Source: Chiloscyllium plagiosum (Eukaryota). Taken from it: 60,585 nt of DNA. The position numbers and the translations under genes are program-made. Positions 13,398-54,980 of the stretch are shown in pieces. The stretch covers positions 44,781,240 to 44,841,824 of the forward strand of contig NC_057721.1 of the NCBI RefSeq assembly GCF_004010195.1, read 5' to 3'. The notes under the pieces were generated by a model that was given only the letters and a program-made list of their open reading frames with translations, searched no databases and was not told the origin of the DNA. Each line of letters begins with the position of its first letter. The first letter of the stretch is position 1.

Positions 13398-13446
13398 ATG
13401 CTGTCACTGTGCTGCCTCCTATTTTCTTTACTATTTCCTCAGTTTG
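13398..13446 (+). CDS. Gene A (B7-family IgSF), signal-peptide exon
   Basis: Acceptor ttctttttcAG|G at 13395-96. ATG at 13398 encodes MLSLCCLLFSLLFPQF, a hydrophobic leader. Phase-1 donor G|GTAAGT at 13447. The upstream acceptor implies a non-coding exon further 5'. Confidence 0.8.
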
Positions 13447-13519
13447 GTAAGTTTTTTTTATTTCTTTTAATGCACATGAATGAATCTAAATGAAAATGCA
13501 AATATGAATGACTAATATT

Positions 13520-14980
13520 AAATACTTCTGGCAAATCATGTTTGACTAATTTGATTGAGTTTTTGATTAAGTAACAGAAGTTGGTGAAGGTAATGCAGTT
13601 GATGTGGCATATGTAGACATCCAGAATGCATGGAATTAGATGTCACGTCTCAAAAATACAAACTTGACTGAGTAACAGTAAACGGAATAGTGGTGAACAC
13701 TAGTTTTCTGGGCAGTAATTGTGTTTCCCAGGGGAAAGTATCAGGACCATTCTTCTTCTTGATCTATGGTAAAAAAAAACTAAATCTGCATGTGTAGAGC
13801 ACTAATTTAAAATTGCATACTGTTAGAAAAAGTATAGTTGTGAACTAAGAAGAGGACAATGAAAAACTGGCAGAAAGCATAGACAGGATGCTGGAGTAGG
13901 CAGACATGTGACAGATGCATTTACTGTAGGGAACTGTGGAATTTGTGGGACGGCTGTTTGTTCTAGTCTTTGCATTACTGCTTTGGCTATGAGCCCATAG
14001 AAGGGTGAGTGGGAAAGATTAGGGAAAAACTAAAAGGCATCCTACATGTACGTGAGGAATAGGAGAATGATCAGAGACAGGGTAGGACCGATCAGGGATG
14101 GTGGAGGGAACTTGTGCTTGGAGTCTGAAAAGGTAAAGGAGGCCCTAAATGAGGTTTTTTTGGTTCAGTATTCATGAGTGAGAAGGACCTTGTTGATAGT
14201 GAGAACACCATGGATCAGGTTAATAGGCTTGAACAGGTTGATCTTAAGGAAATGGATGTGCTGGTAATTCTGGGAAGCATCAAGGTAGATATGTCCCCAT
14301 GCCTGGATCAGATACATTCAAGGTTACCACAGGAAGCGAGGAATGAGATTGCTACGCCTATGCGATGATCTTTGCATTCTCACTCTCCACGGGAGTAGTA
14401 CCAGCTGATTGGAGGGAGATGAATGGTGTTGCTCTGTTCAAGAAATGGAATTAGGAAATCTCTGGCAATTACAGCCCAGTCAGTCTTACGTCTGTAGTAA
14501 GCAAGGTACTGGAAACAATTCTGAGAGATAACATTTATGACTATTTGGGAAAACATAGTTTGATTAAAGATAGTCAACACGGCTTTGTGAGGGGCAGGGC
14601 ATGCCTCACAAGCCTTATTGAGTTCTCTGAGGACGTGACAACACAGTTTGACAAAGGTCAAGCAGTGGATGTGGTGTATATGGATTTCAGTAAGGCATAG
14701 GAGGCATGGGATACAGGAAAAGTTGGCTATTTGGATATAGAATTGGCTGGCCCATAGAGGGTGGTACATGTATGGAATGAGCTGCCAGAGGAAGTGGTGG
14801 AGGCTGGTACATTTGCAACATTTAAAAGATATCCAGATGAGTAAATGAATAGGAAGGGTTTAGAAGGATATGGGCCAAATGTTGGCAAATGGGACTAGAT
14901 GTATTTCGGATATCTGGTCAGCATGGATGAGTTGAATCGAAGGGTTTGTTTCTGTGCTGTATATCTCTATGACTCTATGA
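13520..14980 (+). mobile_element. CR1 fragments in the gene A intron
   Basis: SIKVDMSPCLDQIHSRL, QHGFVRGRACLTSL and the tail ctctatgactctatga. Confidence 0.85.
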
Positions 14981-15070
14981 GTAAATCATATAAAATTTAT
15001 TTAAACTGAAGTTAATAAATATTTATTGGAAGATTTGTTTTTAAATGTATTATTTTCATTCCTTATGCAG

Positions 15071-15412
15071 AGACATTCACTTTAACCTGTGACCGGTATA
15101 TCGATTCAGAGATTGGTAAAGCTGTCACTCTCAAATGTTCCTTTGAGAGCCGTTCCAACAGTAACCCGGTTGTGATCTGGGAGAAGGTAGGCGAAAAACA
15201 AACCATCCACGAATACAGGGATAATCAAGATGACTTAAGTGAACAGCACAAGAACTACACCAAGAGAACTGCAGTTGCAGGCAATGCCGTCAACAGAGGA
15301 GATGCATCTCTTACTCTGAAGAATGTTAATGTTTGGGATGAAGGAACATACAAGTGCTATGTCAGCACCAACCATGGATTTGATGATGAAACAATTGAGC
15401 TGTTTGTATGGG
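15071..15412 (+). CDS. Gene A IgV exon, B7-H4/VTCN1-like V-set domain
   Basis: Acceptor tgcAG| and phase-1 donor |GTATGT. Translates (E)TFTLTCDRYIDSEIGKAVTLKCSF...VIWEKVG...IHEYRDNQDDLSEQHKNYTKRTAV...GDASLTLKNVNVWDEGTYKCYVSTNHG...LFVW. It has the V-set C, W and DxGxYxC. HExxxxxDxLSEQ, RTAV, ASLxLKNV and GTYKCY are motifs I recall from B7-H4. Confidence 0.92.
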
Positions 15413-16606
15413 GTATGTCAGCTGTTCTGTTCTTTGTCTTTAATTACAATCATTTGTTTAAAGTTTTAATTTTTTACAAAGATGGCCAATGACAACAAAG
15501 GGAAGGACAGATCTTATTTCTTATAGCAATGTGTTCTGATTTTTATAGAAAGGCAATAATAATGGTGTCTCATCTGGACAGCTATACTAAGCAATAATGA
15601 AAATCTAATCTCTTAGTTCTGTAGGATTCTCCTGATCTCCCAGGTTGAGCCTATACCAGTCGAGTACAGAGTAATGAGAGCTGATCCTTTTGAAAATGAA
15701 ATTCTATTGTAGATTGACAGGGTAGATATTGAGAGACTATCTCTCCCTTGTCAGAAGAGCCTAGAATAGGATAAACTGTTATTTTTAGAGTGTTAATTTT
15801 GGAATAGCCTTGATGGACTGTTCTATAATGACTATGTGACACTAGTGTTTCACTTAAATTTACATTCAAAGATTTTCAGCAAGACACAAAAATTCTGTTG
15901 AAAGTCACCTCAAGGCATATGTCTCAACTACCCCGTGTGCCTACTTCTGGCAGCTTTAATTGTTTAAAAATAATGGGTCTTCGTCTGCTTAGCTTTGTTA
16001 TAGGGATGAGGAAGAATTTAGTGTCTCAGAAGGTCATTCATATTTGGCATTCTCCCTGAGAGGGCAGTTGAATCATTGAAAATATTGAGGCTGAGTTAGA
16101 CATTTTTTTGATTCACAGATGAGTCAGGGTATGTGAGGGCAGGCAGGAAAATAAAGTTAAAGCTATCATTAGAAGAACCATGATCTTATTTAACGGCGCA
16201 GCAGATCTAATGTGATGGATGGCCAATTCCCAGCTTCTATTTCTTAATCAACACGTGATATTGCAGAAGGATCAGTGATTGTGCAGAATTCTCTACTGAA
16301 GCTGCAATGAGGGGGATCAAGAGATTAGTGGTGATGATGCAATTTGTCAAACTTCATCCTGTTCATAGGTAGTCATTTGAACAATAACCCAATTCTGAAA
16401 TTCTGATGAATCTAAATCCCTGATGTCTTTTCCAGAGTTGCTGAGGGAGAAAAGCGTTGTGAATAAAACCTAGTAATTTGCATGGAAAAGCAGGGGATTG
16501 GTCATAGTGCCTGGTAGTAACATTTTTATTTGCTCTGCAATAAGTTAATCTGTCATAAGTAACCACAGAATATGAAATGTCTTAACGGCTCTTATGAAAA
16601 CTGTCA

Positions 16607-16843
16607 CAGTAGATCACCCCCCCCCCACCACCGTACCCGCAGGGGATACATTCCAAGACTTGCCACAGAAGCCCGAAGCCACGGGTAGGAGTGAACCCAT
16701 TTATTTAAATGGGAAATGTACCATCCCGGCAGCATCCTGGTCCCTGGTTCTGGAATGTTTCCTATTATATGTTCAGGGCGTGAAAATGATTCCACGGATT
16801 CCGGTTCGCCCTGTATATTGTAAAACCGGTTGCAGTTTAACTG
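16607..16843. mobile_element. Tigger/pogo-like MITE (tentative)
   Basis: Starts CAGTAG...CCCGCAGGGGATACATTCCAAGAC, which resembles Tigger-type termini, and ends ACTG|TA. Confidence 0.5.
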
Positions 16844-16935
16844 TATAATTTCTTTCAGAATGGCATGTTGAAAATCAGAAATTATTCATTTATACTATTA
16901 TTAGTTATTATAATAACCACTTTTTTTTTTCTTAG

Positions 16936-17223
16936 CAAAGGGTACTGGAGATATGCACATCTTCTGGGAAACTAATGGTGATAATAATGACGTGCTGACT
17001 TGCAAATATTCAGGTTTGTACCCAGTACCAAAGATTAGCTGGAAAGACACACATGGCAATGATTTGAACAGCATTAGTGAAACACTCCTGTCCAGAGATG
17101 AAAATGGATTATACCATGTGGAACATTACCTGAAGAGAGAGAGTGATGCCAAAAATCAATATGTCTGCTTCGTACAGCACAAGTGGATGGCAAAGTCCAA
17201 GGCTGCTCGAGCTGTATTCACAA
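16936..17223 (+). CDS. Gene A IgC exon, B7/butyrophilin-type constant domain
   Basis: Poly-T acceptor cttAG| and phase-1 donor A|GTGAGT. LTCKYSGLYPVPKISWKD...DENGLYHVEHYL...YVCFVQH matches the CxxxGxYPxPxxxW...DxxGLYxV...YxC pattern of B7/BTN membrane-proximal domains. Confidence 0.92.
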
Positions 17224-17978
17224 GTGAGTTTATTTCTGAGATCAATGTTGATACTAAAGGTAACTTAAATTATTATATAAGTTGTGGAGAAGAAGCATGT
17301 TAATAAGATGACCTTAGAAGCTGAGAAAGGACTATTCTGAATTTGTTTCTCTTTTAAATGTATTGGGTTTTATAAGATTTAGGGTTTGGAAGTCACAGAT
17401 TATCCAAAATAGGCAATTAAGAATTCATTAGCAATGTTAAGGCAGTTGATTGTTTCTTAAGAAGCAATAATTTAGATGTGGTACATAACCTAATAGGTAC
17501 AACAGATAACAGGTGAGAAAGATTGACTGGTACCAAATGGGAATACTGGGTGGGGAAAGTATAGCAATACTAATCTCCATAGCTGATGGGAACGTTTTAC
17601 TCAGAATAGTGTACTGACCACAGATTGGACAATGGGATGGATGAAGCTGAGCTCCATGGCTGAAAGTGGTAGTCTCATCTGTTTGCCAACAGCAGGCTTC
17701 TTCTCTCTCTTTGTTCTTTTGCCCCATTGCCTTTGCTGAGATATCAGAAAGCTCAGTATCTTCTCTTAGGTGAGGGTTGAAAGCGGTTATTCTTTCTGTT
17801 ATCTTTTTTTTTGTTGAGCAAGACAGTTTTTTTGTTGTTGTTGCTTCCACCTGTCCAATGATGTCTTTGACAATATGGAACTTATTAATGATAGGACTGG
17901 TTTTACAGATTAAGACCTTGTAAGAAATTGCAAGCAGCAGCAATAGTAAAATGTCTTTACGTTTCCTTTTTTTTCCAG

Positions 17979-18031
17979 ATGGGCATAACATGATTCGTCT
18001 CGATGATGGAGAACCTTCTCCTGATTTATAA
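17979..18031 (+). CDS. Gene A probable terminal coding exon (hydrophilic tail, no TM)
   Basis: Strong acceptor ttcc(t)8ccAG| at 17977-78. In phase 1 it reads (N)GHNMIRLDDGEPSPDL, then TAA at 18029-31. Confidence 0.6.
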
Positions 18032-40030: not shown

Positions 40031-40074
40031 CAACAGCTCCAAGTAACCAGTGAGACAGCGTCATCCTCAGGAAC

Positions 40075-40111
40075 ATGGGCTCAGGTCTCAGGCTCTGGCT
40101 CTTCCTCTTAG
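40075..40111 (+). CDS. Gene B (VJ-C1 inhibitory receptor), leader exon
   Basis: aacATGg in good Kozak context, MGSGLRLWLFLL, phase-1 donor G|GTAAGG, then a 95-bp intron. Confidence 0.85.
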
Positions 40112-40206: not shown

Positions 40207-40542
40207 GGCCTGTTGTCCCTCTGAAAGTGATTGAGTCTCCTCCAGTTCTCTCCCTCCTGAGAGGGCAGACAGCTCGGATCAACTGCAGCCTGATACCGGG
40301 AGAGGAGCGGGCAGAGCTGGTGAGATATTATTGGTGTCGGGCAAGAGACAATCCTGACTTCAGCGGAAACAGATCCTGGAATTTCCTGGAAAACAGCTCC
40401 CGTGTGTCAGTGTCAGAGAGTTTCCTCATTATCCGGGAGCTGATGGTAAATGATTCTGACACTTACCGCTGTGTGGTTCTCAGAGAGAGACCTCGGCCCT
40501 GGAAATACTTCCAGGGAAATGGAACAACACTGACCATCCAAG
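40207..40542 (+). CDS. Gene B germline-joined VJ-type IgV exon
   Basis: Acceptor ttccAG| and donor AG|GTAATT, both phase 1. LKVIESPPVLSLLRGQTARINCSL...YYW...LIIRELMVNDSDTYRCVVLRERPRPWKYFQGNGTTLTIQ has the V-set core plus a J-like GxGTxLxI in the same exon. Confidence 0.93.
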
Positions 40543-40587
40543 GTAATTGTGGAAGATCCGAAATATTCAGCAGGAAGGGCTGCATCT

Positions 40588-40606
40588 AGAGAGAGAGAGA
40601 GAGAGA
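40588..40606 (+). repeat. (AG)n microsatellite
   Basis: Seen directly in the sequence. Confidence 0.9.
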
Positions 40607-40988: not shown

Positions 40989-41174
40989 TCAAGGTGAGAG
41001 TGGTGCTGGAAAAGCACAGCAAGTCTGGCAGCATCCGAGGAGCAGGAGAATCGACGTTTCGGGCAAAAGCCCTTCACGTCAGGCTCACTGAAGCTCCAGC
41101 CTGACCTGATGTGTTTTTCCAGCACCACTCTAATCTTGACTCTGACCTCCAGCATCTGCAGTCCTCACTTTCGC
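40989..41174. mobile_element. Fold-back PLE insertion, 16-bp TSD
   Basis: CACGATGGGCCAAATG at 40973 and 41175. Confidence 0.85.
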
Positions 41175-41824
41175 CACGATGGGCCAAATGGCCTGGTTCT
41201 GTGCAGTGAGCTTTCTCTGAGAAGATGAAGGGAGAGTGAAATAACTCAATGTGTGAGAGAAGGAAACAGAAACAGTGCTTAGAATCACAGAGATAGAGCC
41301 CAGACTGGGATGTTGTGTGGGAGCACAGGGTCTGCCCGGGGTTTACCTTTAATCTCACATTAACCACCCACCAGCAGCACCTGCTTTTCTATCGGATCCT
41401 TTTCAACATTTAGCTTGAAGAAAACCGCCCAAAGACAAAGCTCTCTAAACTGAACTCTAACAGCGAAAGATCCGATTTCCAACAAGTCAATTACCAAATA
41501 GAACGAACATGATTTTGGGAAAAATGTTTATCATTACCTGGAATATACTGCTCCAAAAAAAAACCACAACCCGAGCACGTGTCGGGACGAAACTGATTGA
41601 GGCTCCCGGGCTCTCATTCTAACCCACATTGTTAGGAGGGGTCTGTTCTCCTTGGGTCGGTGATTTGGTAATCGGGGTACAATTTATTAAACCCATTCTG
41701 CACTGTCCCATTGAGTATCCAAGTTTCACGCTGTTTTAATCATCCCTCTCCTTGCTACCTGTCGATTTCTATTTGCTACAATGAAGATTGACACAATGTG
41801 TGTTGTTTTGATGTGTTTATTTAG

Positions 41825-42124
41825 CGAAACCTGAAATCTATCTGACTGCGGATCCCCAGAATGAAGGTGTTGGGATTCAGACACTGACTTGTTTGGCTGC
41901 GGGATTTTTCCCGAGGGGTCTGACCATTTCCTGGATTGTTGAGGGGGATGTCTCCTATCAGGAGGAGCCGGGCTCGCTGACAGTAAACACGGACAGCAGT
42001 TACAACCTGAGCTCCCGGCTGCGGATTGCAAGGCCCCAGCGGGAGCAGGGAGCCACCGTCTCCTGTCACATTCAGCACAGGACCTTCACTGGGTCAGTGA
42101 GGACAAGGCTCAGAGACAGTCCAG
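41825..42124 (+). CDS. Gene B C1-set Ig exon
   Basis: Acceptor ttttAG| and donor AG|GTAGGT, both phase 1. KPEIYL...TLTCLAAGFFPRGLTISW...NTDSSYNLSSRL...VSCHIQH carries the C1-set signatures CLxxGFxP, W, NxDxxYxxxSxL and CxxxH. Confidence 0.93.
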
Positions 42125-42680
42125 GTAGGTGCCTCACTAATACTGACCACACCACAGTACTCCCAGTTACAGCCAAGGGACTGGAAAATTAACAATTCCA
42201 TTATAAAACACGCAGTATTGGAGATGGAATAACGGGAAAGAGTCCTTTATTCGTTTACGGGATGTGGATGTCTGACCATTAATTGCCCATGGCTAATTGT
42301 CCATAGGACAGTTAAGAGTCAGCCGCTTTGCTGTAGGTCTGGAGTCACATGTAGGTCAGACCAGGTAAGAATAACACTTTCCCTCCCGAAAGGCCATTAC
42401 ATAGGGATTTCCTACAATCGGTACATGCTCATTAGACTCTTAATTCCAGATTTTGTTTTTCTTGAATTCAAATTCCACCAACTGCCCAGGCAGGATTCGA
42501 ATCCCGGGTCATTACCTGGCTCTCTCGATTAGCAGCCCTATGCAGTGCAGTATGTTAGCCGTATAGCAAAAAAAGAAGGCACTCTAAATTCCATTAAAAT
42601 TAACACAACGCTAACGCTGAATTTATTGGTAGTTATCGGAAATAATGATGTGAATGGAAATTGGCAAAAACAGCCCATCG

Positions 42681-42862
42681 CTGAAAATGTGTTGCTGGAA
42701 AAGCGCAGCAGGTCAGGCAGCATCCAGGGAACAGGAGAATCGACGTTTCGGGCATAAGCCCTTCTTCTTTCAGCATCCCTGGATGCTGACTGACCTGCTG
42801 CGCTTTTCCAGCAACACATTTTCAGCTCTGATCTCCAGCATCTGCAGACCTCACTTTCTCCT
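42681..42862. mobile_element. Fold-back PLE insertion, 16-bp TSD
   Basis: CAAAAACAGCCCATCG at 42665 and 42863. Confidence 0.85.
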
Positions 42863-42949
42863 CAAAAACAGCCCATCGGCTGGGGAGCCGGAGTTGGAAA
42901 TCTCAAACATTGACCTTTCGCGTTGCACATCGTAACCGCCCTAGAATCG

Positions 42950-43530
42950 ATTTGGAGATGCCGGTGTTGGACTGGGGTGTACAAAGTTAAAAATCACACA
43001 ACACCAGGTCTTTCATCGGACAACCACCTGATGATGGAGCAGCGCTCCGAAAGCTTGGCTTCCAAGTAAACCTGTTGGACTATAACTTGGTGTGGTGATT
43101 TTTAACTCTGCTCTCGAATTAACTTCCAACATTTCTTTTTATGGACTTTAATTCAGTCGAACAGGTGGGTTCGCTTCAGTCGCTCTGTTAGAGCACACAA
43201 TAACCTTGAGAAACATTAAAAACAGAAGGCGATTCCGAGCTAGTTTCAACCCTTTGTTTTCACACCGAGCGGTGTCAGAGCTCCTTTCGAAGCCACATTT
43301 CCAGTGCGGAATCGCTCCCTGCTTCCACACCAGGCGGCTCAGTGAAACGTCAAAAATCACACAACACCAGGTTATAGCCAACAGGTTTAATTGGAAGCAC
43401 TAGCTTTCGGAGTGACTACCACCTGAGAAGGAGCGTCGCTCCGAAAGCTAGTGTGCCAATAGTGTGCTATAACCTGGTGTTGAGTGATTTTTAACTTTGT
43501 CCACCCCAGTCCACCACCGGCATCTCCAAA
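42950..43530. mobile_element. Two fold-back PLE insertions (about 42950-43107 and 43353-43530)
   Basis: AAAATCACACAACACCAGG hairpins. The second has a TSD TCAGTGAAA(C/T)GTCA at 43339 and 43531. Confidence 0.8.
43028..43055 (+). ncRNA. Minimal hammerhead ribozyme core (PLE-associated)
   Basis: CTGATGA-t-GGAGC-agc-GCTCC-GAAA-GCT. Confidence 0.65.
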
Positions 43531-46500
43531 TCAGTGAAATGTCAGCATTGACTGAAGAGTAATTCTGGCTTCAGGAATGAAGAGAAAAGGAGCCGCTGGA
43601 TACAGAACAGGCAGCGTTTATACAGCACAAACCAGAGGGGGAATTACAACTCTGTAACAGATGTCAGCAGTTCCACATTGACCCAGTTCATTCAGCAGGA
43701 CCGCTGCGATGCTGACAGAGTGACCATGACTTCAGGCCAGACAGGAATACAGAGGAAAGGCGGGAATTACAGGGAAATGGGAGAACGTTCCATCAAACTA
43801 TCACGGCGACACAAGCAGTGGGCCGAATGGCCTCCTCCTGCGCTCCCATTTATGATTCCCTTCAACAGCCATATGCCATTTAGCCGGTTGGCAGGTTCCC
43901 AGAGCGTGTGAATAGAATGAACCTGTTATATTCTCTGGGCGATAGGCTATTGACATCATCCCGCCGCTTCACTCTGTTCTAGGTGTGTACAGGCAGTGAT
44001 CACAGCTCCTATTACACCACTGTCACTGGACGGGTGGAGATTAGACCATCTATAAATCCCCACTCACATGGGTTTCTTTGGTTCATTACCACAGACCGGT
44101 TGGGATTTTAGATGCAGGATCGTAGCCACAAGAAAAGGAAACCCGTTCAGTCCATACCCACAGTGTCGCTCCTATTCCTGCTCATTAAAGCTCAGGCAGT
44201 AAGCTTATCACCCGGATTCCCAAACTTCACCTTTTTGAAAAAAGACTGAGAGAAAGAAATATCCCTGGCCATGATCTTGATATTTAAGGGAACGATTGTC
44301 AAAGAAACAGCGAGGGGATAGATTGAAAACGTACAAATGGAGCTACGATCCATCAGCACCTTTGAAAACCGCTATGAGCCAAATACTAATGAGGGTCGGC
44401 GCATTGGATTTGCATGTCAGGCAGAAGCTTGGAACAGGGAATTCATGACCAATTTAAAACTCTTGGAGAATGAGTGTGCCGGGCCTAGCTATAGACTGGC
44501 ACTAGTTGGTTGTGGCACAATGTGTTTTTGGTGTACACCAAGGCAACAGTGTCATCCTCGCTCAGCAGACTACAGAATGCACCACTCCAGAACCAAAATG
44601 CTGGAAATCTGATATGAATGTAGAAAATGCTGGCAATTTCTGAAGATGAGGTAGCGTCTCTGGAAAGGGATTCCAACATTGCAGGTGGTGATCTTTCATC
44701 AGAACACTAATGAGAGCCATCATTCTCTAATGAGAGAGCAGGACTATAGGGCCTTATTTGGGAATAGAAGTTTGGAGAGGAGGAATTATAAAATGCATTA
44801 ATATGGGCTGTAGTAAATTATTCCCTCTTGGAGGCTGCCTGGATGGTTTCTGTCTCCACAGTATGCAGTTTGAAACCAATCTTGTTAAAAAATTGCTATT
44901 TTGTGCTGCCATTAAAATAACTGCCAGATCAAAAAGACTAAAAAAAGCTGATCAACAAAAAAAAAGCAGATATGTTGGTCCTAAATGTATGTCACTTGTC
45001 ATGAAGTTGCAAGACTGTGTTGGTTAGGGAAGTGGCTTGTCCTAATAATCTGTAGCTCTATCAATCACGTACAAATAAACAGTAACAGGGATGATTTAGA
45101 AATTACAGAAGATGGATGTGAAGCCTGAAGGCATGAACTTTATTTTCAACAATATTTACCCAGCGCCTTTATTTCACTAAACTACTTGAAGCACCTCCCA
45201 AAAGTATTATCAGTCAAAATGTAACACTGAATCACATCTAAAAAAATCAAATTTAATACATCATACCACCAACCTATTCTCTTTCCAAATCCAGGCAATT
45301 CTGTAACGGAAGCAATTAACATTCAGAAATAAAAATTATTGGTATTTCACAGTAAGTAATACCCTTATAATCTCACAGAGGCCACAACTGCTTAGTGAGA
45401 GAAGGGGTCTTTGTGTTTTGTGAAGTACCGATCATACATGCTCCAAATACCTTTTCATGAAAATACAAATGTAAACATCAGTATTTTTGCAGCTTATTTG
45501 TCATAAGTAACTTTGTTGGGAGGAACCATAAAATAAACACACCTAGAAATGTGACTATCAGAAACTTCAAAAAGCCTTTCTTAGTTGATCACCTCCTGTT
45601 TGGATCTCATAAAGAATTAAATAATTAATCTTTTGATCCTAGTTCTGTCTTTTAATTGTATTGGTTTCGACTGTCTCCAATTTCAACTTTCAAATTAAAT
45701 GATCAATTATATTGGCAATGTCCAATATAAGTCAACTAGTTTTAAGTTTTCTTTTTGAACACAACTGGCCGTTAATAATAGTAACTGTCAGCTTGAAACA
45801 TTAATAGTTACCATGTCTGTATTGAAAACAAAATATTACAAATCATTTTTAAAAAGGCAGCATTGGTAACAGTACAGCTGTATTTCAACAAGTGTATTAG
45901 ATGAGTTCTGAAAAAGGGTCACTGGACCCATAATGTTAACTCTGATTCCTCTCCACAAATGCTGCCAGACCTGTTGGGTTTTTCCAGCAATTTCTATTTT
46001 TGTTTCTGATTTCCAACATCTGCAGTTCCTTCGTATGCTTTTTAATTGGAGGAGGGATTGGGAAGAAAAGTAATGGAGGCACATCATGAAGTAAGTTTGA
46101 AATTGCCAATAATTTAAATAGGGTGCTCAATTTACATGGTCCACTTCCAGCCTGTGTAACTGCAGTGGAAAAAGAGGAATGGGTTCAGTAAAGGTTGCTA
46201 AACATCAGTTTTCTGCATGCAAATATACATGGATGATTTGTTTATTTGTATCTCACCTTGGAAAACTTGTTAGTGGTCACGAAGAGTTTAGAGAATGGAA
46301 GTTTAGCAGGCTGACAGTTTTAAAAGTTATTTTTACTTAATCTGTATAGCTATTCAGTGAAAATTGAAAATACTGTAAGAATATCTCTTAGGCTGTTGTG
46401 CATAACTATTTTCACAATACATTAAAGGGTAACATTTCCCCTTTACCTCAGTGACATGATTCTATATGCTGATACAGTGAGATGTGACTTCCCTTCAGGC

Positions 46501-46744
46501 AGTGACAAAACCACTCATGAATAGCATGACTGTAATGATAAAGACCCAATGATAGTATGGAGCTTGTCCTTCAATAAATAAATAATTTCTACACTTTTTG
46601 AGGAAATTTTAGTAGAAATGGGATAATGCATGTAATATTACTGTTACACAACTGGAACTAATTTTGGCATCATTCCTTCATGGCATTCTATTGGATGAAA
46701 CCTATTTATCCATTTCACACAGACAAGTCAATTCAAAAACTTCG

Positions 46745-46880
46745 AAGTTAAAGATCACACAACACCAGGTTATAGTCCAACAGGTTTAATTGGAAGCATT
46801 AGCTTTCGGAGTGCCGTTCCTTCATCAGGTGGTTGTGGAGGACACAGTTGTAAGGCACAGAATTTATAGCAAAGAGTTTA
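46745..46880 (-). mobile_element. PLE terminal-repeat fragment with a decayed hammerhead core
   Basis: Reverse complement reads CTGATGA-a-GGAACGGCACTCC-GAAAGCT. Confidence 0.7.
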
Positions 46881-47052
46881 TATCAAAAAATTCAAGTGAC
46901 AGATAATAAGTATATTTCTGATTTAACATGTAGGTTAGAGAATATAATTGAACATTTGAATTTCAAAGTATTGCATATTGTGTAGCCATTCTTGATCTTA
47001 TTTGTAATTAATTATTATTAATGGCTTGAATTGTTTCAATTGTGATTTGAAG

Positions 47053-47157
47053 GTTTTTCTAAGTATTATTACCTCGGCCTGCTGAGTCTTATCCTTATTG
47101 TACCGTTTTGTCTTTGGATCACAAAGAGTCAATGCTATAAACAGAAGAATGGAAAAG
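47053..47157 (+). CDS. Gene B transmembrane exon
   Basis: In phase 1 it reads GFSK-YYYLGLLSLILIVPFCLWIT-KSQCYKQKNGK: 20 uncharged residues, then a basic stop-transfer segment. Donor AAG|GTAATC. The acceptor (ttgaAG) is only moderate. Confidence 0.75.
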
Positions 47158-47284
47158 GTAATCAAATAAAATGCAGTCTTTTTTTTAATGGCTGAATATA
47201 TTGCATTGAAAATAGTGCATAAGTATTACATGAAATAATTCTAACAAAAATAACCATTGGAAAAATTTATATTCCACAGGCAAT

Positions 47285-49712
47285 AAGAGCTCAGGATAAC
47301 AGATAGTTAGCCATCTAGGAGAGCAGGAAAAGACAAAGTGCAGGAGTCATTGGTCCTAATGCCACTCTCAAACTGTTTGTCAGTGTCAAGATTATTTCAA
47401 GTGATGAGTTATATAACTAGAGCAGTGGAGCCAAATAGTGGAGATTGGGGAAGATAGATCAAATGATGGGAGATGTGGTAAATTTAAGGAAACTGACAAG
47501 GCAATAGCACAAGGTATTAACATGGGTAGTGATAATCAGTGTGGCAAGAAACTTAACATTTAAGATTGCATCATCAAATAAGGCCTGCTTTTGCGTAAAA
47601 GGCAGAACTAAAAGCTCTGTATCTGAATGCATTCATAACAAAATGTCATACAGGAAGAAATATGTATGATTTGATAGCAATTACAGAGATACGACCACAG
47701 CATGAGCAAGACTAGGACCTATATATTAAAAGCTTCAAGATACTTCAAAAGGACAGGAAGCTCAGAAAAGGTGTTGAGGTAACTGTGTTAATTAAAAACG
47801 AATTTAGTACACAGTAAAAAGATAACATTTGCACTAAAGGTGCAGAATCAGCTTTGGTCTAAATAATAGACAGTAAATGTAAGAAGTGCCTTGTGGAAGT
47901 ATTTTACAGATCATAATAACTGTACTGTAGGATAGAATATACTTGAATATAATGGGGAATTCTGCAAAAGTTATCAGCATAATCAAAGATGATTTAAATC
48001 TACACAGAGATTGAATTAATGAAATTGGCAAGGCAGCGTGGAATATCAGTTCATGTAATGGTCTCAGGGCAGTTTCATAGAGCTGCATGTTCTAGAGTCA
48101 ACCAGAGAGAAAAGTTATTCAAGAACTCATAAGGTGCAATGACAGAAGACTGACTATTGTTCTGATTGTAAACAAGGCTCCAGGAAGCCAAGGTCAAAAC
48201 ATGATAAAATTTTGTTTGCATTTTGAGGATGACCAAAGTGGGTTGAAGACTAATGTTTGAAACTTAAATCAAGGCAATTGCAAAAGTGTGAAAGCGGTAC
48301 TGGCCAGATTGAATTGAGAGATTACGTTAAAGGATAGGACAACATCGATGCAGTGGTAGACATTTAATACATCTTTCATCATTATCAGCAAAGATACATT
48401 TCAGTGAGAAAGCATTTTGGAGAAGAATGAAAAATCTGTGTACCAGTAAGGAAGTTTAAGATAATATTAAATTGAAAGAAAAAGTGCACAATACTACAAA
48501 GATTAGTCCTAAGTCAGAGTTATTAACAATATAATTAGTGACATGGTTGTGGAAAGTGAATGCACTAAAGCCAAGTTCGTTGATGACACAAAAATAGGTG
48601 GGAAGGCAAATGGTGAGGAAAACACAAAGAGTCTGCAAAGGAATATAGACAGGCTAGGCAAGTGGGTGAGAAGTTGGTTAATGGAATATAATGTGCATAA
48701 ATGTGAGGTTATCAAATTTTGCAAGAGGAACAGATGAGCTGAATAATATTTAAATGGTTAAGAACTGTAGAAAGTTATGGAACAGAGGGATTTGAGAGTT
48801 CTTGTCCATGAATCACAGAAAGCTACCACTCAAGTTGAGCAGGTAACAGGGAAGACAAGTGAAATTTTGGCCTCTAGTTTAAAGGGGATGGAGAATAAAT
48901 ATAGGGAGATTTAGCTAAAATTATGCAAGGCACGAGACAGATCACAGATTGAATGTTGTGAACAGTTTTGGTTCCCTTATCTATGGAAAGATGTACTGGC
49001 TTAGGGGGCAGTTCAGGGAAAGTTCACTAGGCTGATATCAAGTATGAAGGGACTATGTTATGTAGTGAAGATGAATAGTTTGTGCCTGTACTCATTGGAA
49101 TATAGAAGAATGTGAGATAACCTTAATGAAACATATACATTCTTAGGAGACTTGACAGGGTAGATGCAAGAAGAGTGTTTCGCCTTTTGGGAGAGTCTAG
49201 AACCAGAGGGTATGATCTCAGGATAACGGATCACACAGATAGATCAGAGATGCGGAGACATTTCTTCTCTCAGTGGGTAATGAGGCTGTAGAATTCTTTG
49301 CCACAGTGGAATATCGAGGCTATATATACTCAAGGCTGTGACAGGCAGGCTTTTAATTAATAAAGGAAGTGAGGGAAGTGTGAGGAAAGTAGATTTGAGA
49401 GTTATCAGAAAAGTCATGATCTCATTGAATGGCCTGCTTCTGTTCCTATGTCTTATGATTTTATTATCTAAATTGAGACGGAATTCTAAAACAAAGAATG
49501 ACAAAAAAAAACTGGATGAATTTAGAATATGAGAGAAAGCTAAGTAAAAATATAAAAACAAATCGTAAGACTTTCTACCAGAATTTGAAAAGGGAAAGCG
49601 GAAAGTGAGCATGTTCCACTGGCAGGGGGAAGAATGCGGAAAAAATGGGAACTAATGAAATGATTGGAAGGGTGAACCAACATTTTGTGTATGTTTTCAA
49701 TGGAGAAGGCAC
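47285..49712 (+). mobile_element. Degenerate CR1 LINE(s) running up to the assembly gap
   Basis: AKFVDDTKIGG and MEYNVHKCEV motifs. Confidence 0.8.
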
Positions 49713-50212
49713 NNNNNNNNNNNNNNNNNNNNNNNNNNNNNNNNNNNNNNNNNNNNNNNNNNNNNNNNNNNNNNNNNNNNNNNNNNNNNNNNNNNNNNNN
49801 NNNNNNNNNNNNNNNNNNNNNNNNNNNNNNNNNNNNNNNNNNNNNNNNNNNNNNNNNNNNNNNNNNNNNNNNNNNNNNNNNNNNNNNNNNNNNNNNNNNN
49901 NNNNNNNNNNNNNNNNNNNNNNNNNNNNNNNNNNNNNNNNNNNNNNNNNNNNNNNNNNNNNNNNNNNNNNNNNNNNNNNNNNNNNNNNNNNNNNNNNNNN
50001 NNNNNNNNNNNNNNNNNNNNNNNNNNNNNNNNNNNNNNNNNNNNNNNNNNNNNNNNNNNNNNNNNNNNNNNNNNNNNNNNNNNNNNNNNNNNNNNNNNNN
50101 NNNNNNNNNNNNNNNNNNNNNNNNNNNNNNNNNNNNNNNNNNNNNNNNNNNNNNNNNNNNNNNNNNNNNNNNNNNNNNNNNNNNNNNNNNNNNNNNNNNN
50201 NNNNNNNNNNNN
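49713..50212. other. Assembly gap (N run)
   Basis: Run of N. Confidence 1.
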
Positions 50213-50659
50213 AAACTCATACCTCCTGATTCAGAGGGAGAGACACCACCACTGCACCGTTAGAGTCCTTAATCACAATTAAAGGCTGAGTCAACAGAGT
50301 AATTTAAAAGGTTAACTAATCTTGCTTACTTACAAGATCAATTCAGACACATTTTTCTTAAGTTTCACAGAATTTGTTAAGCTTATCAAGACATAGATAA
50401 AAGTAACGTTACTCAACAAAAGCAGCATTGTCAATCAATTGCTTACTGCCTGTGATCTGTCTCCTTTGGTTCAAGCTCTTACCTCAAAGCATTTTCACAT
50501 TTGTTATGCTGCATTTAAATAAGCTTGGACCCTTAAACAACAACAAAAACCAGAAAGCATTGATCTTACCTTGACTGGGACATAGGAATATTCTTATGTT
50601 TTGCAAAAGTATTTTTACAGATAGCCATATCAAATAGAATATAATTTCATTCCTGACTT

Positions 50660-53600
50660 AGAGTCATAGAATCATAGAGATGTACAGCATGGAAACAGAT
50701 CCTTTGGTTCAAATCGTCCATGCCGACCAGATATCTGAACTTAATCCAGTCCCATTTGCTAGCACTTGGTACATATCTGTCTAAACCCTTGCTATTTATA
50801 TTCCCACACAGATACCTTTTAAATGTTGCAATTGCACCAGCCTCCTCTGGCAGTTTGTTCCATACATACAATACCCTTTGCCCCTTCAGTCCCTTTTAAA
50901 TCTATGCCCTCTAGTTCTGGACTCCCGCACCCCACGGAGAAGACGTTGTCTCTTTAGCCTGTCCATGCTCCTCATGAGTTTATAAACCTCTATAAGATCA
51001 GCCCTCAGTCTCCAGCGCTCCAGGGAAAACAGCACAAAACCATGTTGACTATCCCTAATCAGTCCTTGCCTTTCCAAATACATGTACTTCCTGTCCCTCA
51101 GGATTCCCTCCAACAACTTGTCCACCACTGATGTCATGCTCACTGGTCTATAACTCCCTGGGGTTTCTTAACACCTTTCTTAAAAAATGGCACCATGTTA
51201 GCCCATCTCCAGTCTTCCGGCACCTCACCTGTGACTATTGATGATATAAATATATCAGCAATGGGTCCAGTAATCACCTCCCTAGCTTTCCACAGAGTTC
51301 GAGGGTACACCTGATCTGGTCCTAGGGATTTATCCACCTTTATGCCATCCAGCACCTCCTCTTCTGTAATATAGACACTTTTCAAGATGTCACCATCTAT
51401 TTCCCCACATTCTATATCTTCCACGTCCTTCTCCACAGTGAACACTGATGCAAACTACTTGTTTATTATCTCTCCCATCTCCTGTGGTTCCACAAATAGG
51501 CCACCTTGCTGGTCTTTGAAGGGTCTTATTCTCTCCCTAGATTCCTTCTTATCCTTAATGTATTTATAAAACCCCTTTGGATTCTCTTAACCAATGTGGG
51601 CGGCACGGTGGCACAGTGGTTAGCACTGGGTGGGTTTCGCTTCGGCGGGTCGGTGTGGACTTGTTGGGCCGAAGGGCCTGTTTCCACACTGTAATGTAAT
51701 CTAATAATCTAATCTAACCCTATTTGCCAAAGTTATCTCCACTTTTTGCCCTCCTGATTTCCCTCTTAAGTATACTCCTGCTGCCTTTATATTCTTCTAA
51801 GGATTCACACGATCTCTCCTGCCTATACCTAATATATGCTTCCTTCTTTTTCTGAACCAAAACATCTATTTTTCTAGTCATCCAGCATTCCCTACACCTA
51901 CCAGCCTTTCCTTTCACCCTAACAGGAATATATTTTCTCTGGACTCTTGTTATCTCATTTTCGAAGGCTTCCCATTTTCCAGCCGTCCCTTTACCTGCGA
52001 ACATCTGCCCCCAATCAACTTTTAAAAGTTCTTGCCTAATGCTGTCAAAATTAGCCTTCCTCCAATTTAGAACTTTAACTTTTAGATCTGGTCTATCCTT
52101 TTCCATCACTATTTTAAAACTAATAGAATTATGGGTCGCTGGCCCCAAAGTGCTCCCCCACTGTCACCTCAGTCACCTGCCCTGCCTTATTTCCCAAAAG
52201 TAGGTCAAGCTTTGCACCTTCTCTAGCTGATATATCCACATACTGAATCAGAAATTTTCTTGTACATACCTCACAAATTCCTCTCCATCTAAACCTTTAA
52301 CACTGTGGCAGTCCCAGTCTATGTATGGAAAGTTAAAATCCCTGCCATAACCACCCTAATATTCTTATAGATAACTGAGATTTACAAATTTGTTTTTCAA
52401 TTTTCTGTTGATTATTGGGGGGGGGGTCTATAATACAATCCAAATAGGGTGATCATCCCATTCTTATTTCTCAGTTCCACCCAAATAATCTTCCTGGACG
52501 TTTGCTAGGAATATCCTCCCTAAGTACAGCCACAACCCTCATCAAAAATGCCATTCACTCATATCTCTCGCCACACCTTCTATTCTTCCTATAGCATTTG
52601 TCTTCTGGAACATTAAGCTACCAGTCCTGTTCATCCCGGAGCCACGTCTCTGTAATTGCTATGGTATTCCAGTCCCATTTTCCTAACCATGCCCCGAGTT
52701 CATCTGCTTTCCCCTGTTAGGCTTCTTGCATTGAAATAAATGCAGATTAATTTATCAGTCCTACCTTGTTAGATTAGATTTTTAGATTAGATTACCGACT
52801 TTTAGATTACCGACAGTGTGGAAACAGGCCCTTCGGCCCAACAAGTCCACACTGACCCTCCGAAGAGCAACCCACCCAGACCCATTTCCCTAAATGATGC
52901 ACCTAACACTATGGGCAATTTAGTATGGCCAATTCACCTAACCTGCACATCTTTGGACTGTGGGAGGAAACCGCAGCACCCGGAGAATATGCAAACTCCA
53001 CACAGACAGTTACCCAAGGCAGGAATTGAACCCAGGTCCCTGGCGATGTGAGGCAGCAGTGCTAACCATTGAGCCACTGTGCTGCCTCATGTTCTCTGCT
53101 TTGTCTCTGCCTACCGACTGTTTGACTCGCTCCTTTTCCCAACTGTACCTGTCTCAGACTGATCTCTTTCCTCACTATTTCTCTGGGTCCCACACCCCCC
53201 ACCTTACTAGTTTAATTCCTTCCAAGCAGCTCTTGCAAATCTCCCTGTCAGTATGTTAGTCCACTTCCAATTCAGGTGCAATCTGTCCTTCTTATACAAG
53301 TCACTTCTACCCTAGAAGAGATTCCAATGATTCAAAAATGTGAACCTTTCTCCCCTGCACCAGCTCCTCAGGCACACATTGATCTGCTCTATCCTTCTAT
53401 TCCTACCCACACTGGCTTGTACCACCATGAATAATTCAGATATTACTATCCTTGAGGACCTTTTTAAATTCCTGCCTAACTTCTTATATTCAGAATCTCA
53501 CCCTTTGTCCTTCCTATGTCATTAGTTCCAATGTATACAACGACCTCCTGCTGGTCCCTCTCCCCTTTGAGTATATTCTGCACTCTGTCCAAGATAGCCT

Positions 53601-54480
53601 TGATCCTGGCACCAGGGAGACAACACACCGTTCTGATTTCTCGCTATCGGTTGCAGAAACATCTGTCTGTGCCTCTGACTAAAGAGTCCCCCATCACAAT
53701 TGATCTCGTGAAAGCTGACGTACCCCTAATTACATTAGAGCCAGTCTTGGTACCAGAAACATGGCTGTTCGTGCTACATTCCCCAAAGAGTCCATCACTC
53801 CACATGTTTTCCAAAACAGCGTATCTGTTTGAGAAGCTGATAACAGCAGGAGACTCCTGCATGACCTGCCTCCCTCTCCTACCTTTCCTGGAGGTAACCC
53901 ATTTACCTGACTGTATCTGCAGTTTTTCTCCCTTCCTATAAGCCACATCCATCACACCCCCTAGCTCCTGTAAATTCCTCATTGCCTCTAACTGCCAGTC
54001 CAACTGATCCATGTAATCTGACAGGATTCACAAACAAAGATATAATAATCATACATACATAAGAATCAGTAATATGGAAATTTTCCCTAATCTCCCACAT
54101 CCAACAGGAAGAGCACATCATTCTACTAAAGGCCATCTTTTTACCTTAACAATCGACAGACCCAGAAAATAGCACAGACTTACTGCTCTAAAAAACACTG
54201 CTCCAAGATAACTCAGTATAAATGTTTTATATTTTCAAATATTAATCAAGAGACAGAGCTCAATAAAATAAATAATCAAAAAGGAGCCACTTCACTCACT
54301 ATTGCAGATTTACAAAAAAAAGACAGCTTGCTTACATTTACCATGCACTTAGCTGCTCCTATGCTGTGAGCTCTCCCACACAGATTCCTCTAAGGTTAGC
54401 TGTGATTTTGCTATTAGTTAATTTTACTTTGATTCACTCCGACGTCCAGAGATACTTGAACTCAAACAGCAAAGGCAGTA
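50660..54480 (-). mobile_element. Long CR1 LINE (ORF1, EN, partial RT, 3' tail) with two HE1 SINE insertions (about 51598-51716 + and 52770-53085 -)
   Basis: ORF1: CSSCWMWE, SNRYAVL, IVMGDSLVRGTDR. ORF2: LNWRKANFD, DKSLGPDQVYPR. Confidence 0.9.
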
Positions 54481-54728
54481 GCTGTGCAGTTCACTGCTGT
54501 GTCAGACAGCAGTGTAGGTTTCTTTCTTTCTCACGTTTTCACTGACCTTGCGGTCTCTACCTTTGTCTGTCTTCCTCCTTTTTCAAGTGCTGTTGTGTTG
54601 ATCTTTGTTTTCCCAAATTTCCAAAACAATGCAACAGCTTATAAAACAGTATCAAACCATAAATTGAAATGTCCTCATTTTTAATTCATCTTGTGCTCTT
54701 ATTTCTGTTTCTTGTTCCTATGTTGCAG

Positions 54729-54980
54729 GATAATATTTCTCTGAGCAGTGAAACTCTTCATTATGCATCTGTTCATGTCAAAACTCTTCCAAAGAGGAAA
54801 CAAAAACAGCAATTGAAAAGACCAGAGCAGGACCAGGCAACAGAATATGCCGTTCTAAAGGTCAAAGATAAAAATAATCAATTCTACAGAGATGACTCAG
54901 TTGCCAGCATTTGCCCCACATCAAACATAACGCAAACTGCTAACTACATAGGAACCACATATGCTTCTCTTAAGAAATGA
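54729..54980 (+). CDS. Gene B terminal cytoplasmic exon with ITIM/ITSM-like motifs
   Basis: Long polypyrimidine tract then tgcAG|. Reads DNISLSSETLHYASV...QATEYAVL...GTTYASLKK-TGA. AATAAA lies downstream at 55563. The exon is phase 0, so an unseen intervening exon is needed. Confidence 0.8.
   Translation, partial: DNISLSSETLHYASVHVKTLPKRKQKQQLKRPEQDQATEYAVLKVKDKNNQFYRDDSVASICPTSNITQTANYIGTTYASLKK

What the first reader, a model, noticed from the sequence alone, without database searches (positions are those of the whole stretch)
13398..54980. Linked B7-like gene and CD28/NKp30-like inhibitory receptor: candidate receptor-ligand module
Seen: the only two host genes I can find in 60 kb are a B7-family V-C gene and, about 22 kb downstream on the same strand, a receptor whose V domain is of the type that binds B7 proteins. 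Known: B7 ligands pair with V-type receptors (CD80/86 with CD28/CTLA4, B7-H6 with NKp30, HHLA2 with TMIGD2, PD-L1 with PD-1). These pairs are unlinked in mammals but have been proposed to descend from a proto-MHC region. Inference: a physically linked checkpoint pair kept in cartilaginous fish. Adjacency alone does not show binding.
Basis: inference. Interest (0 to 1): 0.85.

Follow-up and report, generated by a model that had tools for sequence, protein, structure and literature searches.

The report
Shark B7-H4 gene beside inhibitory receptor
A bamboo-shark-type genome has a B7-H4 (VTCN1) gene 22 kb from an inhibitory immune receptor gene built like an antibody chain, and the two share a chromosome in other sharks and a ray, but nothing yet shows the proteins bind each other.

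Summary
Both genes are real and lie at the stated coordinates on the + strand, 22 kb apart.

Gene 1 (13398-18031) is the annotated VTCN1/B7-H4-like gene. Its four exon translations match a RefSeq Chiloscyllium protein exactly. It has a leader, V and C domains and a short tail, but no transmembrane segment, like the nine elasmobranch relatives I read.

Gene 2 (40075-54980) is not CD28- or NKp30-like. It has a split leader, a germline-joined VJ exon, a C1-set exon, an uncharged TM exon and a tail with ITIM/ITSM-like tyrosines. Related species' RefSeq models call it "SIRP-alpha-like" or "Ig light chain-like". Transcript contigs from two runs join C1 directly to TM.

The N gap (49713-50212) lies in the intron between the TM and last exons. 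Exon order is colinear across it. A cytoplasmic mini-exon of about 20 residues, needed to keep the ITIM tail in frame, is absent from the read letters.

In 10 of 10 elasmobranch species where both genes were returned, they sit on records of identical length. Accession numbers are consecutive in two species.

Binding is untested, so the receptor-ligand idea rests on adjacency alone.

First-stage notes of this scan flagged the same stretch and similar genes nearby; those notes are unchecked.

The parts
13398..13446 (+). B7 gene (VTCN1-like) leader exon. The ATG is at 13398 and the GTAAGT donor at 13447. The annotated protein has one more Met upstream, and an AG acceptor lies at 13395-96.
   Evidence: DNA read. 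The translation is an exact substring of P0085.
15071..15412 (+). B7 gene IgV exon, phase 1 in and out.
   Evidence: Pfam V-set 6.7e-9. PDB VTCN1 IgV 4gos 3.9e-18, 69 bits. Exact substring of P0085.
16936..17223 (+). B7 gene IgC exon, phase 1 in and out.
   Evidence: Pfam C2-set_3 1.8e-13. PDB CD276 3.2e-8, BTN3A3 1.4e-5, CD80 8.4e-5. Exact substring of P0085.
17979..18031 (+). B7 gene last coding exon: a 17-residue hydrophilic tail ending in a stop codon, with no transmembrane segment.
   Evidence: The same tail type is present in all nine elasmobranch VTCN1(-like) clusters whose sequences I read, plus three further members of the Chiloscyllium punctatum cluster, one of them P0085.
40075..40111 (+). 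Receptor leader exon (split leader), with a GTAAGG donor.
   Evidence: 11 of 12 residues match P0088 and P0068.
40207..40542 (+). Receptor VJ exon: a V domain with a germline-joined J-like G-x-G-T-x-L motif. Phase 1 in and out.
   Evidence: Pfam V-set 2.9e-8. 104 of 111 residues match P0088.
41825..42124 (+). Receptor C1-set exon.
   Evidence: Pfam C1-set 1.3e-8. PDB Ig heavy chains, UrIg2 and SIRP-alpha/gamma. Covered by contigs of runs X1, X2 and X3.
47053..47157 (+). Receptor transmembrane exon. The hydrophobic core is uncharged and is followed by a basic stop-transfer stretch.
   Evidence: Joined directly to the C1 exon in contigs X1 record 1 and X2 record 8 (table 8).
49713..50212 (.). 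Assembly gap (500 N) inside the intron between the TM exon and the last exon.
   Evidence: Exons are colinear on both sides. The mini-exon was not found in the read letters.
54729..54980 (+). Receptor last exon (cytoplasmic tail). It must be entered in phase 0. Motifs: LHYASV at 54756-54773, TEYAVL at 54840-54857, TTYASL at 54954-54971. The stop codon is at 54978-54980.
   Evidence: 78 of 83 residues match P0088. The motifs recur across the family.

Best explanation
Two separate, already annotated immunoglobulin-superfamily genes lie side by side.

Gene 1 is the elasmobranch counterpart of VTCN1 (B7-H4). It encodes a leader, an IgV domain, an IgC domain and a short hydrophilic tail. It is therefore most likely secreted and acts as a soluble ligand (inferred).

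Gene 2 belongs to a receptor family found in both sharks and rays. It has a non-rearranging VJ domain, one C1-set domain, an uncharged transmembrane helix and a cytoplasmic tail with one ITIM and two ITIM/ITSM-like tyrosines. The likely mechanism is inferred from the motifs and by analogy with SIRP-alpha. The VJ domain binds an unknown ligand, the tail tyrosines are phosphorylated, SH2 phosphatases of the SHP-1/SHP-2 type are recruited, and the cell is inhibited.

The adjacency is an old, conserved arrangement within an immunoglobulin-gene-rich chromosome region. It does not by itself show that the two proteins pair.

In this assembly the tail is linked to the rest of the receptor only through an intron that holds the N gap. 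One short cytoplasmic exon is not visible.
For: Gene 1:
- All four exon translations are exact substrings of P0085, RefSeq 'VTCN1-like [Chiloscyllium ...]'.
- VTCN1 IgV (4gos, 69 bits) is the best single-domain PDB match to the V exon.
- Ten VTCN1(-like) clusters of 237-244 aa were returned. All nine whose sequences I read, and three further members of the C. punctatum cluster, end in the same TM-less tail.

Gene 2:
- Colinear tblastn matches of leader/VJ, C1, TM and tail exons. Within exon borders, C. punctatum P0088 is identical at 94 to 98 in 100 residues. The tblastn pieces of Hemiscyllium P0068 are 90-93% identical, Stegostoma P0067 65-79% and Scyliorhinus P0001 61-64%.
- Source names are SIRP-alpha-like, SIRP-beta-1-like and Ig kappa light chain-like.
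- C1 to TM splicing is seen in two contigs from two studies.
- Motifs matching L[HQ]YA.V and [TSK][EV]YA.L are each present in 18 of 26 family proteins.

Linkage:
- Both genes lie on identical-length records in 10 of 10 species where both were returned.
- C. punctatum proteins are GCC27321.1 and GCC27322.1. Heterodontus proteins are XP_067896839 and XP_067896840.
Against: - The mini-exon of about 20 residues between the TM and last exons is absent from the read letters. The best local score was 32, against a self-score of 117 and a shuffled maximum of 35. Splicing TM directly to the last exon would give a stop after one codon. An intact ITIM tail in this individual is therefore assumed, not shown.
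- The one listed Logan-contig run of the window's own species with more than a trace share (X8) had depth 0 on the C1 and TM exons.
- VTCN1 orthology to the mammalian gene rests on similarity and automatic names. The TRIM45 neighbour is only an unchecked first-stage note.
Accession order is only a proxy for adjacency.
- Secretion, phosphatase recruitment and inhibition are inferred, not tested.
Confidence: 0.8

Rival explanations
1. The secreted VTCN1-like protein is the ligand of the neighbouring VJ-C1-ITIM receptor, and the pair is kept together by co-evolution.
For: - Adjacency on one strand and co-location in 10 of 10 species.
- A TM-less B7 protein could act as a diffusible ligand.
- The receptor of mammalian B7-H4 is still described as poorly understood (abstract of PMC13588502, seen in the listing).
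Against: - There is no binding data.
- The receptor's V domain shows no specific likeness to known B7-binding V domains.
- Copy numbers are not matched: one VTCN1 cluster per species against two to four receptor-family clusters in Pristis, Heterodontus and Hemiscyllium.
- The two genes diverge at different rates: 45-65% identity between species for VTCN1 against 54-79% for the receptor.
- Conserved synteny alone is a weak argument.
Confidence: 0.07
2. The receptor is a member of the CD28 family or an NKp30 (NCR3) homologue, as in the finding's title.
For: - The V domain is encoded in one exon with a J-like G-x-G-T motif, as in NKp30 (the NKp30 motif is recalled).
- NKp30 3noi appears at rank 50 of the fold search, with TM 0.54.
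- An Atlas cluster automatically named 'PD-1 family' ranks third at 0.94.
Against: - The CD28 family has a single extracellular V domain (abstract of PMC11599192). This gene has a C1 exon spliced to the TM exon.
- The TM core is uncharged and the tail is ITIM-type.
- None of CD28, CTLA4, PD-1 or NKp30 is among the best 60 PDB sequence hits.
- None of the 20 V-domain relatives I named carries an NCR3 (receptor) or CD28 name.
- The frog relative P0016 does not hit NKp30 at E<=0.1.
Confidence: 0.03
3. The receptor copy in this genome is truncated or a pseudogene. It has lost the short cytoplasmic exon, so the protein stops just after the membrane and has no ITIM tail.
For: - The mini-exon is absent from the read letters.
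- Skipping it gives an immediate stop.
- The own-species run X8 shows no contigs on the C1 or TM exons.
- No receptor protein from the window's own species was among the search results.
Against: - A 500-N gap of estimated length lies in exactly that intron.
- All five visible exons are open, have canonical splice sites and are 92-98% identical to C. punctatum.
- The last exon keeps all three tyrosine motifs.
Confidence: 0.12
4. The receptor family is a third relic of the non-rearranging VJ-C1 antigen-receptor precursor. It would be a paralogue of UrIg (MHC) and UrIg2 (antigen-receptor complex), sitting on another MHC-paralogous chromosome region. Its position next to a B7 gene would then reflect proto-MHC ancestry.
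For: - Split leader, single-exon VJ and C1-set domain, as described for UrIg and UrIg2 (section 7 of PMC12227049).
- The V profile is closest to TCR V-alpha, V-delta, VNAR and Ig light chains.
- UrIg2 (9dmx) is the second-best PDB hit of the C1 exon.
- An unchecked first-stage note places TRIM45, VTCN1, CD2, CD58 and CD101 nearby.
Against: - Per-domain scores to UrIg2 (23.8, 21.7 and 17.6 bits) are lower than to an IgG CH3-type domain (31.1 bits), so the C1 likeness is generic.
- There is one C1 domain here against nine to eleven in UrIg2.
- No UrIg sequences were available for a tree.
- Paralogon membership was not tested.
Confidence: 0.2

Closest known systems
VTCN1 / B7-H4 (B7x)
   Same: - IgV plus IgC ectodomain encoded in phase-1 exons.
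- Best single-domain PDB match is the VTCN1 IgV domain.
- RefSeq names in 12 elasmobranch species are VTCN1 or VTCN1-like.
   Different: - There is no transmembrane or other hydrophobic anchor. The protein ends in a short, conserved acidic tail. Mammalian B7-H4 is membrane-bound (abstract of PMC11985252 in the listing).
- It diverges fast, at 45-65% identity between elasmobranch species.
SIRP-alpha (PTPNS1) and the SIRP family
   Same: - Architecture of V, then C1-set, then TM, then a tail with several ITIM-type tyrosines.
- The C1 exon hits SIRP-alpha 2wng and SIRP-gamma 4i2x at about 2e-13.
- Automatic RefSeq names say SIRP-alpha-like or SIRP-beta-1-like.
   Different: - One C1 domain in sharks and two in the rays seen. 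SIRP-alpha has two (recalled).
- The V domain is not among the best 60 matches to SIRP V domains.
- One survey places the origin of the SIRP family at tetrapods (passage of PMC13262535), so orthology is doubtful.
- The ligand is unknown.
UrIg and UrIg2 (non-rearranging elasmobranch VJ-C1 genes; PMC12227049)
   Same: - Split leader, germline-joined VJ in one exon, C1-set domain and membrane form.
- Antigen-receptor-like V domain.
   Different: - UrIg2 has nine to eleven C domains. The paper text has no occurrence of 'ITIM'.
- UrIg and UrIg2 lie in the MHC and the antigen-receptor complex, not beside VTCN1.
- The C1 likeness is generic.
PRARP genes (Fu et al. 2019, J Immunol; the paper is not held, so this description is recalled)
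   Same: As I recall, these are non-rearranging VJ plus C domain receptors with ITIM-bearing tails. PMC11599192 and PMC10751288 list them among joined-VJ genes.
   Different: As I recall, they are described from bony fish to birds. No sequence was available here, so the relationship is untested. The paddlefish relative P0010 (V-C1-TM with tyrosine motifs, E 8.4e-9) could be one.
NKp30 (NCR3) and the CD28 family
   Same: A V-type ectodomain. The J-like motif is shared with NKp30.
   Different: This gene has an extra C1 domain, an uncharged TM and an ITIM tail. No specific sequence or fold closeness was found.

Membership tests
B7 / butyrophilin family | An IgV domain followed by an IgC domain in the ectodomain. 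| tested here: met
   Pfam V-set 6.7e-9 and C2-set_3 1.8e-13. PDB matches are CD276, VTCN1, BTN2A1, PD-L1 and CD80.
VTCN1 (B7-H4) orthologue | Closest to VTCN1 among B7 members. | tested here: met
   4gos VTCN1 IgV scores 69 bits in one stretch. Single-V CD276 chains score 42-45 bits and PD-L1 about 38 bits. Exact match to the RefSeq VTCN1-like protein P0085.
VTCN1 (B7-H4) orthologue | Conserved position next to TRIM45, as in the human locus (recalled). | not testable with these tools
   TRIM45 would lie outside the window.
VTCN1 (B7-H4) orthologue | A membrane anchor, as in mammalian B7-H4. | tested here: not met
   The last exon encodes a 17-residue hydrophilic tail. The same holds in the nine clusters and three further proteins whose sequences I read. 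No RNA test of other isoforms was done.
CD28 family | [quoted passage not shown] | tested here: not met
   The C1-set exon 41825-42124 is spliced to the TM exon in transcript contigs. Eighteen related proteins whose sequences I read have V plus one or two C1 domains.
CD28 family | V-domain likeness to CD28, CTLA4, ICOS or PD-1. | tested here: inconclusive
   None is in the best 60 PDB hits. An Atlas cluster auto-named 'PD-1 family' ranks third at 0.94, which is a lead only.
NKp30 (NCR3) | A germline-joined VJ domain in one exon. | tested here: met
   Exon 40207-40542 has a G-x-G-T-x-L motif.
NKp30 (NCR3) | A single Ig domain and a charged TM residue for adaptor pairing (mammalian feature, recalled). 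| tested here: not met
   A C1 exon is present. The TM core has no charged residue, and the tail carries ITIM-type motifs.
NKp30 (NCR3) | Specific sequence or fold closeness. | tested here: inconclusive
   Absent from the best 60 sequence hits. 3noi is at rank 50 of the fold search, from a model with mean pLDDT 67.
SIRP family | V plus C1-set domain(s), a TM and ITIM tyrosines. | tested here: met
SIRP family | Orthology to tetrapod SIRP genes (V-domain likeness, locus). | tested here: inconclusive
   SIRP V domains are not in the best 60 hits. The names are automatic. The locus comparison was not possible.
UrIg / UrIg2 | A split leader and a non-rearranging VJ exon followed by C1-set domains. 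| tested here: met
   Description in section 7 of PMC12227049.
UrIg / UrIg2 | Many C domains, and specific likeness of the domains. | tested here: not met
   One C1 exon in the window. Per-domain scores to UrIg2 are 17.6-23.8 bits, below the 31.1 bits to an IgG CH3-type domain.

The most novel reading that the evidence does not exclude
The VJ-C1-ITIM receptor family next to VTCN1 is the ancestral inhibitory receptor of B7-H4, retained with its now secreted ligand in elasmobranchs. At the same time it would be a third surviving relic of the non-rearranging VJ-C1 antigen-receptor precursor, on an MHC-paralogous chromosome. That would offer a concrete candidate for the long-sought B7-H4 receptor lineage.
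Probability: 0.06. Interest if true: 0.9.

Novelty: new member of a known kind. Interest (0 to 1): 0.5.

Why it matters
The receptor of B7-H4 is still described as poorly understood (abstract of PMC13588502). B7 ligands and their receptors have been argued to stem from a proto-MHC region.

A conserved neighbourhood of VTCN1 and an inhibitory receptor with an antigen-receptor-like VJ-C1 ectodomain gives one cheap, testable candidate pair.

Independently, it adds a VJ-C1 gene family with an ITIM tail to the short list of non-rearranging antigen-receptor-like genes in cartilaginous fish (UrIg, UrIg2). My paper searches found no description of this family or of its linkage to VTCN1. Supplements were closed, and three key papers are not held.

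If binding fails, what remains is ordinary. The two genes are already annotated, and both lie in an immunoglobulin-gene-rich region.

Tried and rejected
- Cytoplasmic mini-exon. I searched the read letters 47158-54728 with peptides from five relatives and from the two closest relatives with shuffled controls. Nothing rose above chance.
- Gap flanks. I looked for repeats linking them and found none.
- Second TM exon for the B7 gene. A hydrophobicity scan of 17224-39900 gave only unconvincing segments. The homologues then showed that the gene ends at 18031 without a TM.
- Transposon-like ORFs. I scanned ten against Pfam, and only 2 of 10 hit (RVT_1 weakly, and zf-RVT). Calling the rest transposon debris is my reading, not a result.
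- NKp30 link through a frog V-ITIM relative. P0016 gave 44 PDB hits at E<=0.1, none of them NKp30.
- UrIg2 kinship of the C1 exon. The strong whole-chain E-value comes from three weak domain matches.
- VJ model. Mean pLDDT was only 67 with a disordered C'-C'' region, so the fold ranking carries little weight.
- Papers not held: Flajnik 2012 (PMC3709836) and UrIg 2023 (PMC10530332). The PRARP paper (Fu 2019) did not turn up in two searches.
- Mirror-tree co-evolution test. I rejected it because the receptor set probably mixes paralogues. For example, Heterodontus to Heptranchias identity is 76.8%.
- Joined models. I never built, searched or folded a joined spliced model. Exons were searched one by one, and full-length comparisons used database proteins only.
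Full report
**The gap, tested first.** The window has two N runs, 49713-50212 (500 N) and 57387-58222. The ORFs that one search lists across the first run are only X translations. The gap lies between two receptor exons. The transmembrane exon (47053-47157) is on its left and the last exon (54729-54980) on its right.

Full-length relatives align colinearly and in the same orientation across the gap. These are P0001, P0004, P0012, P0064, P0065, P0067, P0068, P0088, P0092 and P0093. This supports the scaffold order.

However, residues 262-279 of the close relative P0068, a short cytoplasmic exon, match nothing in the read letters. A local search with the two closest relatives' peptides scored at most 32, against a self-score of 117 and a shuffled maximum of 35. 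The TM exon ends in phase 1 and the last exon must be entered in phase 0. Direct joining would give a stop after one codon.

So continuity and an intact frame across the gap are not shown. The missing exon may lie in the gap, whose letters I did not look up. I found no repeat linking the two flanks.

**The B7 gene.** Reading the DNA gives four coding exons with AG/GT borders and phase-1 junctions:
- leader, 13398-13446
- V, 15071-15412
- C, 16936-17223
- tail, 17979-18031

Pfam gives V-set (6.7e-9) for the V exon and the butyrophilin-type Ig-C model C2-set_3 (1.8e-13) for the C exon.

Against solved structures, the V exon's best single-domain match is the VTCN1 IgV domain (4gos, 3.9e-18, 69 bits). 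The lower E-value of four-domain CD276 comes from two stretches; single-V CD276 chains score 42-45 bits. The C exon matches CD276, butyrophilins and CD80.

A search with the V exon returned 7 proteins out of 12 candidates. Six are named VTCN1 or VTCN1-like in sharks and one, a Logan protein, carries no name. A profile of these returned 10 of 3265 candidates, adding Heptranchias, Pristiophorus and the sawfish Pristis.

All four exon translations are exact substrings of P0085, the RefSeq 'VTCN1-like [Chiloscyllium ...]' protein. The gene is therefore already annotated, and the window comes from a Chiloscyllium-type shark.

The ten clusters are 237-244 residues long. All nine whose sequences I read, and three further members of the C. 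punctatum cluster, end in the same short acidic tail without a hydrophobic segment. The product therefore looks secreted. This is an inference, and other isoforms were not tested with RNA.

**The receptor gene.**
- A leader exon (40075-40111) is split from the V exon as in antigen-receptor genes.
- The V exon (40207-40542) carries a germline-joined J-like motif.
- A C1-set exon follows 1.3 kb downstream (41825-42124; Pfam C1-set 1.3e-8).
- A TM exon with an uncharged core lies at 47053-47157.
- The last exon holds LHYASV, TEYAVL and TTYASL.

A scan of 1.84 billion representatives with the V exon found 47 proteins at E<=0.001. The five best are four elasmobranch proteins and one frog protein. 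The four elasmobranch proteins have the same V-C1-TM layout, and two of them (P0001, P0004) also carry the tyrosine tail.

Their sources call them 'tyrosine-protein phosphatase non-receptor type substrate 1-like' (SIRP-alpha-like), 'SIRP beta-1-like', 'Ig kappa light chain-like', 'Ig heavy chain Mem5-like' or uncharacterised.

The closest relative is C. punctatum P0088, with identical residues at 104 of 111 (VJ), 97 of 99 (C1), 33 of 34 (TM) and 78 of 83 (tail).

Of 26 family proteins, 18 hold the first tyrosine motif, 18 the second and 11 the third. Seven of the eight that lack the first two motifs are short forms or isoforms, and the eighth is P0093.

**RNA evidence.** No listed holder of the stretch is on record as RNA. 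Four runs guessed to be RNA were laid on 41500-47400.
- In two of them, from two studies of a closely related organism, one contig each lies on the C1 exon and continues directly on the TM exon. These are X1 record 1 and X2 record 8. They run on for a further 957 and 1284 bases beyond the TM donor.
- X3 covers the C1 exon.
- X8, the run of the window's own species, has depth 0 on both exons.

So C1-to-TM splicing is shown in a relative, but expression in this species is not.

**What the receptor is not.** The V exon alone and a 10-sequence V profile match best to TCR V-alpha, V-delta, shark VNAR, Ig light chains, CD4 and CD8-beta. CD28, CTLA4, PD-1, NKp30 and SIRP V domains are not among the 60 best shown in either search.
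- A model of the V domain (mean pLDDT 67) is closest to VNAR and antibody V domains. NKp30 appears at rank 50.
- The language-model Atlas puts an 'antigen receptor' cluster first and an automatically named 'PD-1 family' cluster third. This is a lead only.
- A frog V-ITIM relative does not hit NKp30.
- The CD28 family is defined by a single extracellular V domain (abstract of PMC11599192), which this gene does not meet.
- The C1 exon's strong match to UrIg2 breaks down into three modest domain matches, weaker than the match to an IgG CH3-type domain. It is a generic C1-set domain.
- One survey dates the SIRP family to tetrapods (passage of PMC13262535), so the automatic SIRP names do not establish orthology.

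**Linkage in other species.** Instead I compared the record lengths that the searches report.

Both genes were returned for 10 species: Scyliorhinus, Mustelus, Stegostoma, Heterodontus, Heptranchias, Pristis, Chiloscyllium punctatum, Hemiscyllium, Carcharodon and Cetorhinus. In all 10 the two genes sit on records of identical length.

Species with only one of the two genes in my results could not be counted. Those are Mobula, Hypanus, Hemitrygon, Narcine, Rhincodon, Pristiophorus and the Chiloscyllium of P0085.

Protein accessions are close or consecutive in several species:
- C. punctatum: GCC27321.1 and GCC27322.1, consecutive
- Heterodontus: XP_067896839 and XP_067896840, consecutive
- Cetorhinus: five apart
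- Carcharodon: 39 apart

Accession order is a proxy, not proof, of adjacency. First-stage notes place TRIM45, CD2, CD58, CD101 and further VJ receptor genes just outside the window. I could not check them.

**Reading.** The receptor works, by inference from its motifs, like SIRP-alpha: an ITIM-bearing inhibitory receptor with a VJ-C1 ectodomain. It belongs to a family present in both sharks and rays. I found no paper describing that family, but supplements were closed and three key papers are not held.

The receptor-ligand idea has no support beyond adjacency. Receptor copy number exceeds that of VTCN1 in at least three species. The two genes also diverge at different rates, 45-65% against 54-79% identity between species.

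The idea remains worth one binding experiment, because the B7-H4 receptor is still called poorly understood (abstract of PMC13588502).

Noticed in passing
window 17979-18031; proteins P0057-P0063, P0076-P0078, P0084-P0086: Elasmobranch VTCN1(-like) proteins lack a transmembrane segment. They share a conserved acidic C-terminal tail, seen in all nine clusters whose sequences I read and in three further members of the C. punctatum cluster. B7-H4 may therefore be a soluble protein in this lineage.
   Followed up: partly
window 13395-13400: The annotated protein P0085 starts one Met earlier than the ATG at 13398. An AG acceptor sits right before that ATG. The first codon is probably split by an intron, and an upstream exon was not located. 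An older model (P0084) matches 2422-2481.
   Followed up: no
proteins P0003, P0050, P0066 (Hypanus, Mobula): Ray members of the receptor family carry two nearly identical C1 domains, which looks like an exon duplication. Sharks have one.
   Followed up: no
protein P0075 (Hemitrygon akajei): This family member has the same V-C1 ectodomain but a different transmembrane segment and no ITIM tail. It may be a non-inhibitory counterpart, as in paired receptor families.
   Followed up: no
protein P0011 (Heterodontus): The receptor V domain also matches a protein named PTGFRN-like at 1.3e-8 in three stretches. In humans PTGFRN lies near VTCN1 (recalled).
   Followed up: no
window 42680-42870, 42950-43000, 45940-46030, 46745-46850: Short interspersed repeats in the C1-TM intron are extremely abundant in the RNA-type contig sets, with summed depth up to about 1.3 million. 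They produce hundreds of spurious joints.
   Followed up: no
window 41748-41824: Contig X1 record 1 continues 77 bases into the intron upstream of the C1 exon. This suggests an unspliced or alternatively spliced form in that run.
   Followed up: no
window 57387-58222 and flanks: This is a second N gap. To my eye the ORFs on its right flank look like the GIY-YIG part of a Penelope-like element. It was not tested.
   Followed up: no
VTCN1 diverges faster than its neighbour. Between the hemiscylliid sharks and Stegostoma, whole-protein identity is 61% for VTCN1 (C. punctatum) and 79% for the receptor (Hemiscyllium).
   Followed up: partly
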